Positions 3,171 through 46,687 of a DNA stretch of 64,000 nucleotides are shown piece after piece. The stretch comes from Mytilus edulis (Eukaryota), in contig NC_092354.1 in NCBI RefSeq assembly GCF_963676685.1, positions 28,768,001 to 28,832,000 of the forward strand, in the 5' to 3' direction. The translations under genes and the position numbers were made by a program. The notes under the pieces were generated by a model. The model saw nothing but the letters and a program-made list of their open reading frames with translations, was not told the origin of the DNA and did no database searches. Position 1 is the stretch's first letter; every line of letters begins with the position of its first letter.

Positions 3171-6100
3171 TTAGCACGGAGCTTGGGATTGCTGACTTGT
3201 GTATTTCAACTACAGCTTCTAAGGTTTGTTGAATCTTTTCTTGGGGAGCAATTGGCGTCACATGTGTGGTTAGTGGACGAACTGGACCAGAGTTGTTTGG
3301 AACACTTTCCACGCTAGTCAAAACCCATTTAAGAGGGTGTACATCATTTGTTGATTGGCCTTTGTTGTTCCTGTCAAATTCATCTGAAGGGCTTAACGCT
3401 TCTTAGGGAATGGCTAATGTATTTCAGTGGTTAATTCCTGTTGTATTAAACCCCGCTACTATGGTAACTCTTGTAAATGCCTTCTCATATGCCTGTTTAC
3501 TTAATGTAGGGGCTGATTCCTTGTTGACTGTTGGGGTCACATCACATGTACACAGGTATCAATACCTTCATTAGAGGACCAAACATTTTCGGTCAAGAGG
3601 ACACAAGAAATGTGTGGTATGGGGATGGAAATACAAGAACCTCTATTATGTTGGCAAGAGATGCTTCTAGCTGTCCCAATGTCTCGTATGAGTGATATGA
3701 TTTGCGATTCTCGCATCGGGAGTATTTAAACTCGGTATTTCCGTATAAGTATTCAACTCGTCAGAGAATTCAGTATTTTGGTGGATACTAGTGTACAGGT
3801 TTTTTATTGTTGAAGGCCAAATTATGTAAAATTACTTAAATCCATGATAACTGTTGAAGAGTTGTTTTATTGCAAATAATGGTCCTTCTTGAAAGACTAG
3901 ATAACATAATATGCTCTGTTCAATAGAAATAAACTTTATGCAACTGGATGTCTGTTATCCTATTTTGGCTTAAATCCAGGATCACTGAACACGATTATGA
4001 CCCGTGTATATAGCAAAATCCTAAATACAACGTTTGGTGGTGCGCCTGTCAAATGCGGAACGTACAGATAAGGTAATAGCTAACATGTGAATATACTTTT
4101 GGTATCGGTATCGGATTCGACCCGGAACTTGTTAATTATTGGCAATATTAATTATGTAGAAAACAAGGGTCTGGAGTGGTGTAATTTTTAATCTACACCA
4201 TTGTCCTATATTAGTTCTATATAGAGTTGAATTCTTTGATTTGTCGTTTTTACCCGATGACGGCTGACAAATTGGACCTCGTAATTTTAGTATTATAGAT
4301 ACAACTGTTAATAAATATTAGAAAATAATGGATCATACGACCGATTTAAGGTTACATAAAAAACATTCGCAGCTACATTAAGGCCGTTTTTACACTACTT
4401 GGGACAAGGGCAGATAACTCTTCACTATCTCATTAAATATTCATGCGTCGTTCTTGCTGCGCCGCCATGATCGACCTGAAAAATGTCCAGTTCACCAATA
4501 CTTGATGAAACGACGTTGCAACAACTAATTCGTTAGGGTGTAGAAAGGTTCAAATCAGGGTAATTAGCAAAAAAATGTACATTATAATGAATAATTATTG
4601 CGATTTACACGATTTTCTAACGAGTACTTAGTCCCGCCCTCAATCCGAAACTATCGGATTCTTTTAGAAGCTTGCATCCGGTTATTTCTCGAGCACCTGT
4701 CTGGCTACGTAAAACTAGAAAATATGGACAGTTGTACGGAAATTTTGTCATTTAAGCCAATAATTTGGTAAGAATTATCATCAGGTTATTTCAAAAACAT
4801 CATTTGACTGGTATTTATTTTGTTATTTGTCGAATTTTGTCATCCGCATGGCAGCATATGCCTCGGACATGGCCGGATTATAAAAAAAACTCGTGTAGAC
4901 ATTCATTTCGGTTAAAACAGAAGTTATACTTTCTCATTCGTCTCATTTTATCATTATTTAATTAATTTGATGTATGATGTTCAGTATGCACGGTAAATTT
5001 CCTTTACAAAGTGATAATAGTACAAAAAGGGGGGATGGGTGGGCTACAAGTTCATATAATAACTGCATATACATTGTCCCCACAGCTACACACAGGGAAA
5101 ATGATATCTGTAAGCAGCTATGTAGACAGGCTTGTTTGTGGCTCAGTCTGTCTTTGATCTTGTTTGCACCTAATATTTTTCACATATGGCCCAAAATTTA
5201 TTTGCTACTGCAGTGCAACCAATAAAACTGATAACTAGACATCACTTAAGCTCCTTTATATGTTCAATGACACCACAAGACAAAATATCTGACACAAGGA
5301 ATACGGTTGAGAAGTGATAGTTGTATGAGGTCAATAGTTCCAGTTATGCATCATCATTTAATATAAATTTGTAAAAAGCTTGTTGGATTGTTATGTATAC
5401 TAGTACATGTAAGCTTTAACCAAGGAAGGTTTTATGCAAGGAAAACATGCAAGACACTGACATATTCTGTATGTACCTGGTTACAAGTTATTTAATTCAG
5501 TGGTTGTTTGCTACTGTACAATATATTTTTTTGTTTGTTTACTATATTGATACTTTGAATCAGGAACATATGATGGGACTTGACACTACCTGATTGTAAT
5601 CGCTTATATTGTCGTGACGAGTTAATAAGGATGCTATACAGAAACACACGTGTTAAAAATGTACTCCCCATTATCCTAATAATTTTATATGATATCAATG
5701 AAGCGTCATTCAAGCTACTTTTACATGTATAGTGATGCCAGTGTGTGAAACTCTGTGTCTTCAAATTCATTAAAATTGCATTCAACTTATCACAAAATAT
5801 ATACATGAACATGAACAGAATGTAAAAAAGGTAATAAAAAAATGGCAGCGATTGCCGCGATGATTAAAAAATTCTAAAACCTTTATAAAACACTTCACTT
5901 GTAAAAAATCTATTTTATTTTGATCAGCAAATCAATAACAACAACATAAGTAGAGGTAAAACATTTTAACTGGTCAGTCTTCTAGTGAACCATACATCAT
6001 AAAAGGGAAAGATTGTACGTTCACCGATTTTATTGGTGAATACACTTCGCTTCCTTAAGCAAAGCGCCCCCTAGCGACTCAACACGAGGAAGTTTGGCAG

Positions 6101-7310
6101 TATTTGTTTCAAAGTAGCTTATTTCAGTTTAAACTTCATAACTTAACCTCGTATTGAATCATGAGCAGAACTCGCACAATACTACACAAATTTTATAAAA
6201 ACTCCCCAATTTCTTAAAAACTATTGATATAAACATTAAAGAATATATTTTCTTGAGTAATTGCAAATAAGTTAATTTAGATTGCTTAAATTACCCCCGG
6301 TAGAGATTATTATCTATATGTTATTGCAAGTTCTTTCCTTTTAGATTGCATTTGAAACATAAATGAACTGAAAAGTGTACTTGAATGAAAAAAGAAAGAT
6401 TTCTGAAATTTGTACATCTTTTTATTTTTCTTAAATTTATTATAAAAAGCATTTTCTTTTTTTGAGTTTATAAGTGCAATTTACATGTAAACAACTATTG
6501 ACCTAGTTCACTGTACAAGTTAAATTCAGATTTTTGTTTTATTCTACAGTTTAACATACATTTTTGCCCCCTCCCACAATTGGTATGATGATTAACCTTT
6601 AAGTTAAGAATATGTAAAGGATAGAAAAAAATGGTCATTAATGGCATCAATATGTAATATTGAAAAAGAGTTATGCTCCTGGCTTTTAATTAAAAAACTA
6701 AATAAAACCTAAACATTCCTAAAGCCAATTAAGGAATGAAAAGAAAACATAAATTCATGCAGGTAACATAAACAGACATTCATGTAATAACATCATTCCT
6801 CTTCAGTTAATCATAATAATAATATTAATCATTTTAAAGTACTGAAAGTTTATTTCTTTATTTTCTCATGCTGTTTGCTAAATATTCTTGTAATGAAATT
6901 TTGCCTGTCATTTACTTGTTATAAATCCTAAACTATAATCTTGTAAATTGTTATAGAAATGTTCTAAAAAAGTAGAATAAATTCTTATTTATTAATATAC
7001 ATGTATTCTCTTTGTTTAGTCACCAATTTAGAATGATCTCCCTTTTCCATAGGATTGTTTGGATATTTATGATAAATTGCATTTTAATGACATGATAAAT
7101 GTGATGTCTTTGTATAATCTGTGAAACAAATTAATAAAATAAAATAAAAAAGAAGTTGAACACCATGCAAAGAAATATATTACTCAACAGAATAATACAT
7201 ACATGCACATTTTTTGTAAATATACATGCAAATGAAAGTTTTGTTTTAGTTGCATATATTACATGTAATTGGTCTATCTTCCACATACAATATTTGTTAT
7301 GTATTTCTAA

Positions 7311-41365: not shown

Positions 41366-43391
41366 TTCAAGTATCATTAGTTTGTTAGTTTTCCAAACTA
41401 GGAGTTTCAGGATGAAATTTATTAATAAAGCCATCGATTGGGTTGGAATCTGTAGGATAAATTTCTACTGCTAAAATAAAAATAAAAATATGACTCTTGT
41501 GGGGTTTAACCGATAGAAAAAATTCGCAAATATGGTATCGTTGTAAAACTTATTTTATTATTTCATATAGAAGTAATGGTGAACATTTGGAGATAATGCA
41601 CTTCAAACTTCATTTCTTTCTTCTTTTTTTTTTGTTTATCTTTGTAGATGTCTTACCAGTAAACTGATGTCTGAAATGAACATAAAAGGGAAAATGACTA
41701 AACATGCCTTTGGTGACTAAAACCTGTTCGAAATTATAAGTGAGTCATACCAATGTTTTACAAAATGAAGAATGTGTTACAATTTGTCACCAAATCCTAC
41801 TCTGGCATTACATTATTTTTTACCCAAATCTTTTCACAAAATCCTTGCATTGAAAATTAATTAACACAATAACCCAAAGGTTGCCATCAGTAAATTATTT
41901 TAAATAATGATATCATTAAACAGAAATAAGTTGTTCACTTAAAATAGAATAGTACTTAATGTGAACTGCAAAAGAAAATTTACCAAATTATGATGGTGTA
42001 CTTATACAAAGGTTTTCCTATTGCAGATACTGTAGTAAAAAGTAAAAACACAAAATTACTGAACTCCGAGGAAAATTCAAAAAGAAAAGTCCCAAATCAA
42101 TTGGCAAAATCAAAAGTTTAAACACATCAAACGAATGGATAACAACTGTCATATTCCTGACTTGGTACAGGCATCTTATGCAGAAAATGTTGGATTGAAC
42201 CTGGTTTTAATGCTAGCTAAACATCTCACTTCTATGACCAGGTCAGGTCGAACTCGGAAAATCAGGTATACTCGGTTTTGCGAGTTTTCAATCCCATCAT
42301 GCAGTTTCGTCAATAAAGGGAGATAATTTTGTCGGAATTTTTAGTTTCATTTGGCGGGAATTTTTAAAATTAAAAAAATATATATATTTAAATCCTATAT
42401 ATATATTGAATTGGTAAAACAATAAAGTATTTTATTAAAGTAAAGTGTTGTGTTGTATATTCATTTGAATAATTGAGCAATTATTTTTTCACAATGTTGG
42501 TCTATCTATTTCGCTGTAAATACACTGGTGTTCAAATGTTAATTAATATGATCAGATTGGTTAATTATCATGTTTGATGTTTGATAATTAATTGATATGT
42601 AAAATAAATAACTCAGTTAATAAAATTGTTTTGTAACAGTCTTTGAAGTTTTATTCATTTTTGTTTTCATTGATAGCTGATCCCGGCTTGTGAAAGTTAT
42701 TATCTCAAGCCCAAGCTTTAATTTAATGTGAACAGCATTGCATTCACTCAAGTTAATTGAGAAATTTAAGACAATTAAGAATTTGTTTATATATACTGCA
42801 ATTGAATTTCATCAATTTCCATAAGCTATCTGATCTCATAACTTGTTATAACGTAGAAACATCATAATATTCCTTTATTTCCGTGTACAACAGTACATAT
42901 GCCAAAGACAAAGTAAGTATTTATACTTTTATTTTTTTGGATGTAGTACATTTGTGTCGTTTTTTTTTCTCGGTTTTTTTTTTTATTAATTAACAAATAC
43001 AGTGTAAAGCAACAAGTTACTGTTTTTCTCATACGAATATTAAGATAAATATATGAAACACATAGAATCTTCATCTTTTCTGACACTAGATCTGGAACGT
43101 GTGATTAATTTTAATTGTGTATTGCTCATAGTTTCAACATGACATATCAATGAAAGTAAACCTGACATCATTTAGTCCTGAATATGCATGTAATATTTTT
43201 CACTGGACATTTGACAAACAACATCAATCGTTTCTATATATTTCCAATTCATGAAATAATTGCCACTGAACGTTTACAGAATAAAGGTTTTATGCAGAGG
43301 AACAGTATTTATTATGTTTTATAATTAATTGTATTGTAAATGTATTGCAATCTCCAATATATTCTATAACATTTATCTCTCTTAATTTCAG

Positions 43392-44184
43392 CAAAAAGAA
43401 GGTAGTTACAGCTAGTTACCAAGAAGACAAGCATCTTCGTACCAACACCAAGAATCGCCGCAAGCAGACCTTGTTCATGAAGGCTCAAGAATTCAGCACT
43501 CTAACAGGCTGCTTTGTATTCATGAAGATTGTAGACAACGATCTACAAAAGTCTTTCGTTCTCAGCACAGATGACTTGTACTCTGCTTATCAGCTTGGTG
43601 GTCTCAAACCACATACTATTGAAGAAAGACTCACCTATACAGATGACAACCAACACCAGTTTGGACTAAACCCAGTGATGCCATCACCCATAAAGATTAC
43701 CAAAAGACAGCCAGCCAAACTGCATTTTACCTGGGGGACTTAAACAACTTCCGGTGTTTGTGGACAATACCGTAGTGACGCACCAAGAAGAGGAAACATC
43801 AATGCAATTATCACCACCACCTGTCACTGTTAATGCAACAACACCATCTGATGAACAAGATCCCATAGCCACCATGGACAACGACTTGGTTTTGAAAGTA
43901 CTTGATCTTATTGACGATCACCCGAGTTTGTCTGAAACAACCATAGACCTACTAGAGACCATGAGTACCAGTCATTGTTGAAGTTGAAGAAGTGACAGAA
44001 AGCAGTTCCCTAACAACCTGCAGATACTGCAAGACTTCTTATGAAAAAGACAATGCCAACGGTCGCCAGAAGAAATGGGTGCAGTGTGAGGGTAATTGCA
44101 ACCAGTGGATGCAGTGCATGTCTGCCCAAGAAACACCCTAGACCTTCAAAGAAGACCAACACTTGGAGTTGCCCTTGTTCTTAA
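43392..44184 (+). pseudogene. Divergent SRF-type MADS-box protein with C-terminal PHD finger, frameshifted
   Basis: After a tttcag acceptor: YQEDKHLRTNTKNRRKQTLFMKAQEFSTLTGCFV (cf. SRF FIDNKLRRYTTFSKRKTGIMKKAYELSTLTGTQV). An acidic S/T/P linker follows, then CRYC...WVQCEGNCNQWM...ACL...WSCPC. About three frameshifts. Confidence 0.7.
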
Positions 44185-44245
44185 GTTAAACAAAAGACAT
44201 AGTGATATTGACATTTGATATGTACAATTTATTATATACAACTAT

Positions 44246-44520
44246 GATTGATTGTTGGTTGCTTAACGTCCAGTGGCAAATATTTCATGCATATTCAGGA
44301 CGAGAACAAATTCACAATAAATACAATAGGTAGGTTGATACAATAGAGGCCTTCTGGGATGATGGTCTGGGAAATTTGGACTGCCACTGGAAAATGAGGG
44401 TATATTGGATAGGGACATCAATTTTGCCTTGCAACAGGCCACCTACGGACCCTCAAAAAGTTGTTGCAAGGGTTCTTAATGTGCAAAAAGCGTGGCACTC
44501 TCTTAACACGAGGCATCGGA
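44246..44520 (-). mobile_element. 5'-truncated MetaSINE-like copy
   Basis: Same family as 10633-10993. Confidence 0.7.
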
Positions 44521-46687
44521 ATTGAAGAGAGGAATAGCTAATTGAAACTCTCAGATGACAATACAAACATTCATTGTATACTTCAAAAGAATAAATGTTA
44601 TTTCCTTATAAATCGATCAATTTGGAATAAATGTTATTCAAATGTATAATTTTTACCAAGACTACACAATAATGGAAATAGAATCACAGACCATCGCTCA
44701 TTGTGATAACTTCCTATCATTGTTCATCACCTATATTGGGGCAGTATACACATTTAATTTGGTTTATCCCAAGAAAATTGAGAAAACTATGTAATTTTTT
44801 CAGAGTCATGATGGGATTAGTTGATGTAGATACCTGCTTAGACAGGAAACTTTTGAATGTATTGGCTGTGGTGAAAAATAAAAAAAAGAATTAATATGAT
44901 GGAATATATCAAGAACTTTTACCATGTAAAAATGATAGATCTTTTTATTTTGTAGATTAGTATATTTTTGTTCTTGTGTGGGTTTTGATATTGTACACAC
45001 ACCGAAAAATTTGAATGGTTCTTTTGCTGACCATCAGAACTAAAATTTCCCTATGACAATGTGTATACATACTGGTTACATTCCCAAGTTATTTCTCAAT
45101 AAGATGAAACCTAAAGATCATATCTAAGAACAAGTATTGTAAACAAAACTAAATATCTATGAATATTATTGTCTCCCCAAAAGAGGCATGGTTTGTGAAA
45201 CAGATGTATTACTTTTGGTGGATTGAAAAGTTTATACATTGTGCATGTTGTGTATATTCAGATAAAATGATTACTATAGATTACTTTTTTTCATGGGTAT
45301 CAATTTTTGTGGTTTTGGTTTGAGAAAACTTGCATATTCATGAATATTTTATTTTTTTTGGGGAAAAGTCTGCACTCATTCCTATAGAAAGTTTGTAATT
45401 TGTTGAACATTAAAATACATGGTGTTCCTGTACCCATGAAATTTGGTCTCCAACGAAAAGTAACATGATTAATGTAATAAATAAGCATGTCCTCCCCCCT
45501 TTTTTATATTTTTTTGTGTACTGTTTGAACTAATGAGCATACTATAAAAAATGCAAAATAAATGCATGACTGATACTATGCATGTTTCTTTTTTTAATAG
45601 CTAAGGCATGGATGAGATTGTCCTTCCAGCTCAAATGGTCATCTTCCCAATATTGGCAGTAGTATTGTCTGTAATCTTAACACTTATTGTCCGGCATATA
45701 ATTGTCAAGTTGAAATACGTTGACAGACTCAGAATACGGGTTTTAGACATTTCAATTAGGTATGTCTTCTGTAAAATATATAATGAATATATATATATTT
45801 GAAAAAAGGATTGCACCACTAAAACTTTTTTCAGTGTACATTTCTTTTTCCATACTTTGGAGTTTAATAAATAAAATGTTTTGGATTTTTTTTAAAATGG
45901 TAAATAATGTTACTTTGGTGTTTTTTTCTAAGATCCAAGGTTTTATAAATAATCAAATTCATAGAAATCCAAATTACATTTGATTTAAATAATGCAATTG
46001 GATATTTGTATTTATCAGACTTTAATTTAAAATGAGGTAGAATTACAAAAAAAGCCTTGCTTGTAAATTTATTAATATTCATTATCATTTAAGCATGTAA
46101 ATTTAACACAAGTGTTGCAGTTCTTTTCAGGATGTGCATTTTGTTTTATTACTTCTATTTCATTTTGGTTTTTTGGAATAAGTACTATACAGTTCTTTTA
46201 TTTTTGTAGCCTTTTCAAGAAGTGAATTTATATATACTAGCTCATTATTTTATACTTTTAGCATGTTTAAACGTCTTCAGAAACATGGGCAAATTCACAA
46301 AATTACAAAAAGGCGAGACATATCTCTGTTAACAGTTCATATACAATTAGAAGAGTACAGCAAATGCAAGAGAGAGGCGAGAGACATCAAAGGGACATCC
46401 AAACTCATAAGCAAAAAAATAAACTTACAATGCCATGGCAAAAAAATGAAAAGAAAAAAAAAGACAAACAACAGTATACAAAATACAACATAGACATGCA
46501 ACTTGAAACAGAAATGCACTGTTTGTCAAAATGATAATGTCTGTGTACAATGTTTTCATGATGTATAAAACATGTAAAATCCCTGAGGGTAGAAACATTT
46601 AAAATAATCATGCAAAAAATAGTAGGTAACAAAGTTATCATTAAAATAGTTTAGATGTTTGGGTAAATTTCAGGACACACAACAACA

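What the first reader, a model, noticed from the sequence alone, without database searches (positions are those of the whole stretch)
43392..44184. Non-canonical animal MADS-box gene fused to a PHD finger
Seen: an ungapped match to the SRF MADS core (K..R..T..RRK..L..KA.E.STLTG..V), followed across about three frameshifts by a recognisable PHD finger ending WSCPCS*. Established: animals canonically have only SRF and MEF2 MADS genes, and neither has a PHD. Inference: this is a relic of an undescribed, probably transposon-carried MADS-PHD family.
Basis: partly seen in the sequence, partly recalled or inferred. Interest (0 to 1): 0.8.

Follow-up and report, generated by a model that had tools for sequence, protein, structure and literature searches.

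The report
Dead mussel MADS-PHD gene copy
This stretch is a broken copy of a small mussel gene that joins a MADS DNA-binding domain to a PHD histone-reading finger, a pairing I could not find described for animals.

Summary
Window 43393-43740 (+) passes Pfam's SRF-TF cut-off (30.1 bits against 26). Behind it, across exactly three frameshifts (+1, -2, -2), lie a linker and a PHD finger.

- **Intact relatives:** They carry both domains in one reading frame: Mytilus coruscus P0003, and P0009 from an unnamed organism. A family profile finds SRF, MCM1 and MEF2, and KDM5 PHD3, among solved structures.
- **State of the window copy:** It is a pseudogene. Its likely start codon reads ATA, it has three frameshifts, and a 3-bp loss damages the last zinc-ligand pair.
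- **Copies in this genome:** There are eight places, all on one chromosome, and every copy read is broken or partial.
- **Past selection:** The copies differ mostly at silent sites (dN/dS 0.14-0.38), so they coded for protein until recently.
- **Transposon carriage:** Not supported. I found no terminal repeats, no transposase and few copies.
- **Second family:** Another mussel MADS plus PHD-like family exists.
- **Literature:** Six searches found no description.

Verdict: a dead member of an apparently undescribed animal MADS-PHD family.

The parts
42407..42591 (+). Upstream non-coding stretch shared with three other copies (52.48, 52.47 and 52.09 Mb of the same chromosome). Similarity with them begins at 42407.
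   Evidence: blastn and MAFFT
42592..42909 (+). 318 bp present only in the window copy; three other copies join 42591 directly to 42910. It holds the ATG (42899) of a two-exon model that I rejected.
   Evidence: no spliced reads
43175..43229 (-). Fragment of a very common SINE-like repeat, upstream of the gene.
   Evidence: 36 of 49 rows of the own-genome DNA search hit only this part
43357..43359 (+). Likely ancestral start codon, 12 codons upstream of and in frame with the MADS piece. It reads ATA here. It reads ATG in copies c2, c3 and c4, corresponds to a Met in P0003, and has G at 43359 in the X2 contig and in 3 of 4 X21 RNA reads.
43393..43740 (+). First reading-frame piece (116 aa). It holds the MADS domain (SRF-TF match at 43423-43521), a following helix and a conserved PSPIK motif. 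It runs into a stop because of frameshift 1.
43700..43705 (+). Frameshift 1: one extra base in an A run (four A here, three in copy c2; the X2 contig lacks one base here).
43721..43978 (+). Second reading-frame piece (86 aa): a family-wide LPG..LK.LPVF motif followed by an acidic, Ser/Thr/Pro-rich linker. No Pfam family matched.
43973..43974 (+). Frameshift 2: 2 bp missing between these bases relative to c2, c3 and the X2 contig.
43965..44138 (+). Third reading-frame piece (58 aa): the first half of the PHD finger (C-x2-C, then C-x3-C, and both conserved Trp).
44111..44112 (+). Frameshift 3: 2 bp missing between these bases. It cuts the finger just before the zinc-binding His.
44113..44184 (+). 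Fourth piece, back in the first frame: the second half of the PHD finger and the stop codon.
44179..44180 (+). In-frame 3-bp loss between these bases. It removes one Cys codon, so the last ligand pair is C-x-C instead of the C-x2-C kept by c3, the 79.40 Mb fragment (c79) and the X2 contig.
44245..44525 (+). SINE-like high-copy repeat inserted just after the gene. Similarity with the other copies stops here; c3 and c79 share 87 more bp.

Best explanation
Window 43357-44184 (+) is a recently inactivated copy of a small, probably intronless, lineage-restricted gene of mussels.

What the intact protein looks like (about 275 aa):
- an N-terminal MADS domain for DNA binding and dimerisation. It is very divergent and mixes SRF-like and MEF2-like signatures;
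- a conserved PSPIK...ILPG.LK.LPVF motif;
- an acidic linker;
- a C-terminal PHD finger of the class that reads trimethylated lysine 4 of histone H3, closest to KDM5 PHD3, with both cage tryptophans kept.

Inferred mechanism of intact members: a dimeric, sequence-specific transcription factor whose binding or action is tied to active-promoter chromatin through its own histone reader.

Shown: both domains, their order in one reading frame, and past purifying selection.
Inferred: DNA binding, histone binding, and the gene's role.

The window copy cannot make this protein. Its start codon reads ATA, three frameshifts break the frame, and the last zinc-ligand pair is damaged.

The family sits at eight places on one chromosome of this genome, and every copy read is broken or partial. 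I read this as a birth-and-death host gene family, not transposon cargo.
For: MADS domain:
- Pfam SRF-TF 30.1 bits against a cut-off of 26.
- The family profile against PDB finds SRF at E 6.2e-6, MCM1 at 6.8e-6 and MEF2D at 2.4e-5.
- The model has the MADS topology, and the listed Foldseek rows up to rank 19 are all MADS.

PHD finger:
- The family profile finds KDM5B PHD3 at E 1.2e-5 and KDM5A PHD3 at 7e-4, with both Trp aligned in the printed KDM5B alignment.
- Passages of PMC9172573 name W1625 and W1635 as the H3K4me3 cleft of KDM5A PHD3.
- A model of P0009 matches only H3K4me3-reading PHD fingers (TAF3, ING, KDM5B; rmsd 2.3-3.5 A) and MADS cores among the listed rows.

One gene:
- P0003 (M. 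coruscus) scores SRF-TF 27.6 and PHD 21.5 bits; P0009 scores 32.1 and 21.6 bits. Each has both in one frame.

Broken here:
-.

Recent coding constraint:
- dN/dS is 0.14 for window against c2 (18 silent and 10 replacement changes, Fisher p 7.8e-7), 0.38 for window against c3 and 0.31 for c2 against c3.

Few copies, one chromosome:
- 5 of 5 protein matches and all 13 gene-specific DNA rows lie on C11.

Rarity:
- Only 11 proteins at E <= 0.001 among 1.84 billion representatives.

Probably expressed elsewhere:
- In organism B an unbroken version stands at depth 29 in a run of only 65 million letters.
Against: - No intact copy was found in this genome, so function rests on relatives that are gene predictions (P0003 has an implausible N-terminal extension) or unnamed Logan and ENA contigs.
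- Run X2 is only guessed to be RNA.
- Pfam PHD is below its cut-off in 3 of the 4 relatives where it is seen.
- Each Foldseek E-value is weak (0.027 at best).
- Purifying selection between copies can also arise among copies of an active mobile element.
- The scattered partial copies with different 5' ends have no demonstrated mechanism.
Confidence: 0.8

Rival explanations
1. The MADS-PHD gene is cargo or an accessory gene of a transposon, and the copies were spread by transposition.
For: - Several scattered partial copies have different 5' ends.
- The region is rich in mobile elements: a SINE lies at 44245-44525 and two Mutator copies at about 48.5-61 kb.
- PHD-like fingers are common in transposon proteins (recalled, not tested).
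- A second MADS plus PHD-like family has copies on three chromosomes that share non-coding flanks.
Against: - There are eight places only, all on one chromosome.
- The ends of the shared unit give only two 7-bp matches at E 0.52, so there is no terminal inverted repeat.
- The roughly 1.9-kb unit holds no transposase or other reading frame.
- There is no significant similarity to the neighbouring Mutator element's sequence; the best stray match has E 0.23.
- 15 of the 27 matching stretches of the second family also lie on C11, which is 6% of the genome. That points to local duplication.
Confidence: 0.12
2. The gene is alive in this species. The frameshifts are assembly errors, or one null allele of a presence/absence-variable gene.
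For: - One of the three frameshifts lies in a homopolymer run.
- 3 of 4 X21 RNA reads carry G at 43359, which restores ATG.
- Low unspliced RNA cover runs from about 42836 to 44242, matching the gene's extent.
- The low dN/dS means any inactivation is recent.
Against: - Two of the frameshifts are 2-bp losses outside homopolymers.
- The few X21 reads over the indel sites (depth 0-2) show none of the compensating indels.
- The other copies read each carry independent damage: a nonsense codon plus a SINE insertion in c2, deletions in c3, truncation in c4, and multiple stops in c5.
Confidence: 0.06
3. The resemblance to MADS and PHD is chance in AT-rich non-coding DNA.
For: Single-sequence matches to solved MADS proteins are weak (E 0.14), and the window's PHD halves give no Pfam hit.
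Against: - The Pfam hit is over its curated cut-off.
- Conserved relatives at 37-90% identity keep both domains.
- Profile matches reach E 1e-5 to 1e-6.
- The structure models agree.
- The copies show purifying selection.
Confidence: 0.01

Closest known systems
SRF / MCM1 (SRF-type MADS-box factors)
   Same: - The N-terminal domain has the same helix, two strands, helix layout.
- It shares the basic R/K-R-K stretch and the STLTG turn with SRF.
- These are the best profile matches among solved structures (E 6.2e-6 and 6.8e-6).
- The window piece aligns to SRF without gaps over 39 residues.
   Different: - Only 14 of 39 residues are identical to human SRF.
- BLASTP against this genome's own SRF exons gives nothing better than E 0.66.
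- The hairpin is one residue longer.
- The domain sits at the very N-terminus of a roughly 275-aa protein that ends in a PHD finger, which SRF lacks.
MEF2 (MEF2-type MADS-box factors)
   Same: - The stretch after the strands (YA-S/T-D-D, then a helix) resembles the start of the MEF2 domain.
- Family member P0005 matches MEF2A (E 0.0013) as well as it matches SRF (0.0014).
- The Foldseek alignments are longest to MEF2.
   Different: - It lacks MEF2's SVLCDCE turn.
- Only 11 of 28 residues are identical to this genome's MEF2.
- The architecture differs. Whether the family is SRF-type, MEF2-type or neither is unresolved.
KDM5A/KDM5B third PHD finger and other H3K4me3-reading PHD fingers (TAF3, ING)
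   Same: - It has the Cys4-His-Cys3 pattern.
- In the printed KDM5B PHD3 alignment both conserved Trp are aligned and lie 10 residues apart. That they equal KDM5A W1625 and W1635 is inferred from that spacing; passages of PMC9172573 name those two residues as the H3K4me3 cleft.
- The fold match of P0009's finger has rmsd 2.3-3.5 A.
   Different: - It is a single C-terminal finger on a DNA-binding protein, not part of a demethylase or of TFIID.
- Histone binding is untested.
- In the window the finger is split by a frameshift and has lost one Cys.
Second mussel MADS plus PHD-like family (P0033 M. coruscus 'NFXL1', P0034 M. galloprovincialis 'MADS-box domain-containing protein')
   Same: - Same order of parts: an N-terminal MADS-like domain (25.3 and 28.0 bits), an SP-K-containing linker, and a C-terminal PHD-like finger.
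- The finger is related to this family's finger (hhalign probability 89%, E 2.2e-6).
- It is also concentrated on chromosome C11.
   Different: - It has two exons and about 195 aa.
- The finger is of the extended, HC5HC2H-like kind.
- The MADS parts did not align in hhalign.

Membership tests
MADS-box (Pfam SRF-TF, PF00319) | Sequence match to the family model at or above the curated cut-off | tested here: met
   Window piece scores 30.1 bits against 26. Among relatives, 4 of 8 are over the cut-off: P0003 27.6, P0004 32.4, P0005 35.2, P0009 32.1.
MADS-box (Pfam SRF-TF, PF00319) | Fold: a long N-terminal helix, a two-stranded antiparallel hairpin, then a second helix | tested here: met
   The model has H4-38, E43-48, E53-58 and H59-69 at moderate confidence (mean pLDDT 60.6). 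The listed Foldseek rows up to rank 19 are all MADS, with probabilities 0.54-0.98 but E no better than 0.027.
MADS-box (Pfam SRF-TF, PF00319) | Dimerisation and binding to A/T-rich CArG or MEF2-type DNA sites | not testable with these tools
   Alignment only shows that the basic residues of the first helix are largely kept.
SRF-type as against MEF2-type MADS | Clear grouping with one of the two ancient clades | tested here: inconclusive
   Profile scores are 29.4 for SRF, 29.3 for MCM1 and 27.5 for MEF2D. P0005 matches MEF2A at 0.0013 and SRF at 0.0014. Motifs are mixed. No tree was built.
PHD finger (PF00628) | Cys4-His-Cys3 zinc-ligand pattern in one frame | tested here: not met
   In the window the pattern is split by the 2-bp loss at 44111/44112, and the last pair is C-x-C. 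It is complete in P0008, P0009 and P0032. P0003 keeps all but the last Cys and ends in C-P-C.
PHD finger (PF00628) | Sequence match to the family model at or above the curated cut-off | tested here: inconclusive
   No hit for either of the two window pieces. A paralog piece scored 14.8 bits. Relatives: 26.0 bits (over 24) in 1 of 8, and 21.5-21.7 in 3 of 8. The family profile against PDB finds KDM5B PHD3 at E 1.2e-5.
H3K4me3-reading PHD subclass | Aromatic cage residues, and binding of the methylated H3 tail | tested here: inconclusive
   Both Trp are aligned to the two Trp of KDM5B PHD3. Cage residues of KDM5A PHD3 come from passages of PMC9172573. Best fold matches are H3K4me3-bound fingers. 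Binding itself is not testable here.
Transposon-carried gene | Terminal inverted repeats or target-site duplications at the ends of the shared unit | tested here: not met
   Only two 7-bp matches at E 0.52 between the 5' and 3' ends of copy c3. No duplication is visible at the boundaries.
Transposon-carried gene | A transposase or other element gene in the same unit, and many copies spread over chromosomes | tested here: not met
   The unit is about 1.9 kb with one reading frame. It lies at eight places, all on C11.

The most novel reading that the evidence does not exclude
Mussels, and at least four further unnamed lineages, possess a third kind of animal MADS-box transcription factor besides SRF and MEF2. 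These are small proteins that fuse the MADS DNA-binding domain directly to an H3K4me3-type PHD reader.

In Mytilus they form at least two related families that expanded and are now decaying on one chromosome. They may be presence/absence-variable genes.

If the intact members are functional, they would be a natural one-polypeptide coupling of sequence-specific DNA binding with reading of an active-chromatin mark, in a domain family thought to be nearly invariant in animals.
Probability: 0.5. Interest if true: 0.72.

Novelty: new variant of a known kind. Interest (0 to 1): 0.6.

Why it matters
Animal genomes are usually described as holding just two kinds of MADS-box gene, SRF and MEF2. Passages of PMC10484287 treat animal MADS genes this way. 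This genome has them too: one SRF locus and two MEF2 loci.

A further, very divergent MADS lineage with its own histone-reading finger shows that the domain was redeployed in a new architecture in at least one animal group. It gives a testable case of a transcription factor that carries its own chromatin reader.

It also shows fast gene birth and death in mussels. The copies were under coding constraint until recently, and none of the copies found in this assembly is intact.

The window copy itself has no function. The value lies in the family it reveals.

Tried and rejected
**Two-exon model.** My first reading had an ATG at 42899, a donor at 42913 and an acceptor at 43390-43391. I dropped it for these reasons:
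- No read or contig skips 42913-43391.
- The X2 contig runs straight through that stretch.
- Copies c2 and c4 lack the upstream part.
- Three copies lack 42592-42909.
- An in-frame ATG 12 codons before the MADS piece is kept in the other copies.

**Naming the organisms behind P0004-P0011.** The protein atlas gave no usable hit. The cluster look-up shows only Logan or ENA sources without names.

**Word-indexed profile search with alignment A2.** It returned only 2 proteins, both already known, so it added nothing.

**Pairwise BLASTP against this genome's own SRF and MEF2 exons.** No alignment to SRF exon 2, E 0.66 to SRF exon 1, and E 0.003 to MEF2. This is too weak to type the domain.

**Relation to the neighbouring Mutator element's PHD.** No significant match.

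It is unrelated: hhalign probability 0.6% and no SRF-TF hit.

**Retrocopy origin.** I considered it because of the 5'-truncated copies. There is no poly-A at the shared 3' end, and upstream non-coding DNA is shared between copies.

**Not built or searched.** I made no tree of the MADS domain. I did not build or search the frameshift-bridged or spliced protein; the pieces were searched apart.

**Supplementary files.** Those of the papers were closed. Supplements of PMC10484287 list the MADS genes surveyed per species and might hold animal outliers that I could not see.

Full report
**1. What is in the sequence.**

Between 43393 and 44184 on the + strand the three forward frames each hold part of one protein:
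- Frame 1 (43393-43740) holds a MADS-like stretch.
- Frame 2 (43721-43978) holds a linker.
- Frame 3 (43965-44138) holds C-x2-C ... C-x3-C with two Trp.
- Frame 1 again (44113-44184) holds the rest of a zinc finger and a stop.

I scanned the four pieces apart. One of the four hit Pfam: SRF-TF at 30.1 bits, cut-off 26, E 3.2e-7. The two zinc-finger halves gave no PHD hit.

**2. The frameshifts are real and number exactly three.**

The genome (1.37 Gb; the window is C11:28,768,001-28,832,000) holds four further protein-level matches to the MADS piece, all on C11. They lie at 7.98 Mb (93%), 52.48 Mb (85%), 57.30 Mb (86%) and 47.14 Mb (40%, with stops).

A DNA search adds a 3' fragment at 79.40 Mb and two 5' fragments at 52.47 and 52.09 Mb:
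- 13 of the 49 rows are gene-specific, and all 13 lie on C11.
- The other 36 rows hit only a SINE fragment.

The MAFFT alignment of the copies shows these changes in the window:
- one extra A at 43702-43705;
- 2 bp missing at 43973/43974;
- 2 bp missing at 44111/44112;
- an in-frame 3-bp loss at 44179/44180 that removes one Cys.

A contig of public run X2 (organism B; 1334 letters over 42960-44247; 71 other letters and 18 gaps) differs from the window by the compensating indels at these same places. tblastn of the M. coruscus protein P0003 gives four colinear pieces in three frames at 87-95% identity.

**3. Every other copy read is also broken or partial.**
- c2 (7.98 Mb) has a TAG codon, a SINE inside the coding region and a truncated end.
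- c3 (52.48 Mb) has several deletions.
- c4 (57.30 Mb) ends after the MADS part.
- c5 (47.14 Mb) is old and full of stops.

Searches of the genome with four distant relatives found only these same copies, at 34-50% identity, plus two PHD-only matches at 32-37% on other chromosomes.

**4. MADS and PHD belong to one gene.**

An exhaustive HMMER search of 1.84 billion representative proteins, using the 177-aa open piece of c2, found only 11 proteins at E <= 0.001.
- P0003 (M. coruscus, auto-named KDM5, 90% identical) runs from the MADS part to the finger in one frame.
- P0009 (317 aa, on an ENA contig of 68 kb, organism not named) does the same.
- P0008 and P0032 keep part of the MADS domain and the whole finger.

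Pfam results on 8 relatives:

| Result | Relatives |
|---|---|
| SRF-TF over its cut-off (4 of 8) | P0003, P0004, P0005, P0009 |
| PHD over its cut-off (1 of 8) | P0011, 26.0 bits |
| PHD just under, 21.5-21.7 bits (3 of 8) | P0003, P0008, P0009 |
| SRF-TF sub-threshold, 14 bits | P0006 |
| No family matched | P0010 |

The family profile against PDB sequences finds two groups:
- MADS: SRF (E 6.2e-6), MCM1 (6.8e-6) and MEF2D (2.4e-5).
- PHD: KDM5B PHD3 (1.2e-5) and KDM5A PHD3 (7e-4).

Models agree:
- For the window's MADS piece, the listed Foldseek rows up to rank 19 are all MADS structures.
- For P0009, the listed rows are only H3K4me3-bound PHD fingers and MADS cores.

All Foldseek E-values are weak (0.027 or worse). 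I count them as agreement, not as proof.

**5. Which kind of MADS.**

The signatures are mixed:
- The turn reads like SRF and MCM1.
- The stretch after the strands reads like the start of the MEF2 domain.

Scores do not separate the two. BLASTP against this genome's own SRF and MEF2 exons is weak or blank. The family is therefore not a recent copy of either, and its clade is unresolved.

**6. Which kind of PHD.**

The two conserved Trp lie 10 residues apart. In the printed KDM5B PHD3 alignment they are aligned to the two Trp of that finger. Passages of PMC9172573 state that W1625 and W1635 form the H3K4me3 cleft of KDM5A PHD3. That the family's Trp equal those two residues is inferred from the spacing.

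**7. Gene structure.**

I first took 43390-43391 as a splice acceptor, with a short first exon at 42899-42912. The evidence favours a single exon instead:
- No joint was seen in two RNA read sets or two contig sets.
- The X2 contig runs straight through the stretch.
- c2 and c4 lack the upstream part.
- Three copies lack 42592-42909.
- An ATG 12 codons upstream and in frame is present in c2, c3 and c4, corresponds to a Met in P0003, and is supported by G at 43359 in the X2 contig and in 3 of 4 X21 reads. The window reads ATA.

RNA cover in X21 is very low (depth 0-4) and unspliced, running from about 42836 to 44242.

**8. Host gene or transposon cargo.**

The unit shared between copies runs from 42407 to at least 44247, plus 87 bp more in c3 and c79. 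Several points speak against cargo:
- The unit has one reading frame and no terminal inverted repeat.
- All copies lie on one chromosome.
- The copies differ mainly at silent sites:

| Pair | dN/dS | Fisher p |
|---|---|---|
| window vs c2 | 0.14 | 7.8e-7 |
| window vs c3 | 0.38 | 0.0026 |
| c2 vs c3 | 0.31 | 3.8e-5 |

I set aside the c4 values because only its first 72 codons are truly alignable. So the copies coded for protein for most of the time since they split. This fits a duplicated host gene family that died recently. It does not strictly exclude an element with active master copies.

**9. A wider picture.**

A Pfam SRF-TF scan of the genome gave 9 rows:
- 2 MEF2 rows on C4;
- 2 rows that are the two exons of SRF on C3;
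- 3 rows of this family on C11;
- 2 rows of a second family, on C11 and C2.

That second family corresponds to P0033 (M. coruscus) and P0034 (M. galloprovincialis), which also have a MADS-like start and a PHD-like end.
- Its finger is related to this family's finger (hhalign 89%, E 2.2e-6).
- It gives 27 matching stretches in the genome, 15 of them on C11.
- The two copies I read carry stop codons. A third, L065, was not read; one TGA was flagged in each of its matching stretches.

**10. Literature.**

Six full-text searches gave no paper on an animal MADS-PHD protein or on the accessions. For most hits I saw only listings and abstract starts. I read passages of PMC10484287, which treat animal MADS genes as SRF and MEF2, and passages of PMC9172573. 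Supplements were closed.

**11. Limits.**
- The joined protein was never built or searched.
- The taxa of the non-Mytilus relatives are unknown.
- Run X2 is only guessed to be RNA.
- Counts from the own-genome searches are lower bounds.

Noticed in passing
L064 (G000 C11:22876729-22879806), L065 (C2:56456397-56459495), L068 (C1:39236400-39237950): A second mussel family with a MADS-like start and a PHD-like (HC5HC2H-type) end, in two exons. It matches P0033 and P0034 and gives 27 matching stretches in the genome, 15 of them on C11. L064 has two nonsense codons and L068 a Trp-to-stop change. L064 and L065 share 91% identity from 620 bp upstream of the ATG to the end of the locus.
   Followed up: partly
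L067 (G000 C10:80958650-80959550), ORF 277-744: An open 155-aa frame without stops that ends in a PHD-like finger of the same style. It is about 30% identical to P0034 and may be a third, still intact group. A twin lies at C6:4888981.
   Followed up: partly
window 44245-44525, and a fragment at 43175-43229: A very common SINE-like repeat, at depth in the thousands in RNA runs. The same element sits inside the coding region of copy c2, and it bounds the similarity between the copies.
   Followed up: partly
window 42592-42909: 318 bp present in the window copy but absent at the same junction in three other copies (52.48, 52.47 and 52.09 Mb). Whether it is an insertion here or one shared deletion there was not resolved.
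   Followed up: partly
working copy c4, positions 3227-6556 (within L008, G000 C11:57285318-57295317): The M. edulis gene model P0001 is a chimera. Its first 116 residues map at 92-100% to a unit duplicated in tandem a few kb upstream of the MADS relic, and the MADS part is joined onto it.
   Followed up: no
G000 C4:29654578-29654697 (+) and C4:29692695-29692814 (-): Two MEF2-type MADS exons lie 38 kb apart in opposite orientation, with slightly different following residues. They may be two MEF2 genes or an inverted duplication.
   Followed up: no
L066 (G000 C11:68049200-68050300), ORF 233-874: A 213-aa open frame ending in a long Gly-Arg repeat, noted by another reader as MADS-like. It shows no SRF-TF hit and no relation to this family.
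   Followed up: yes
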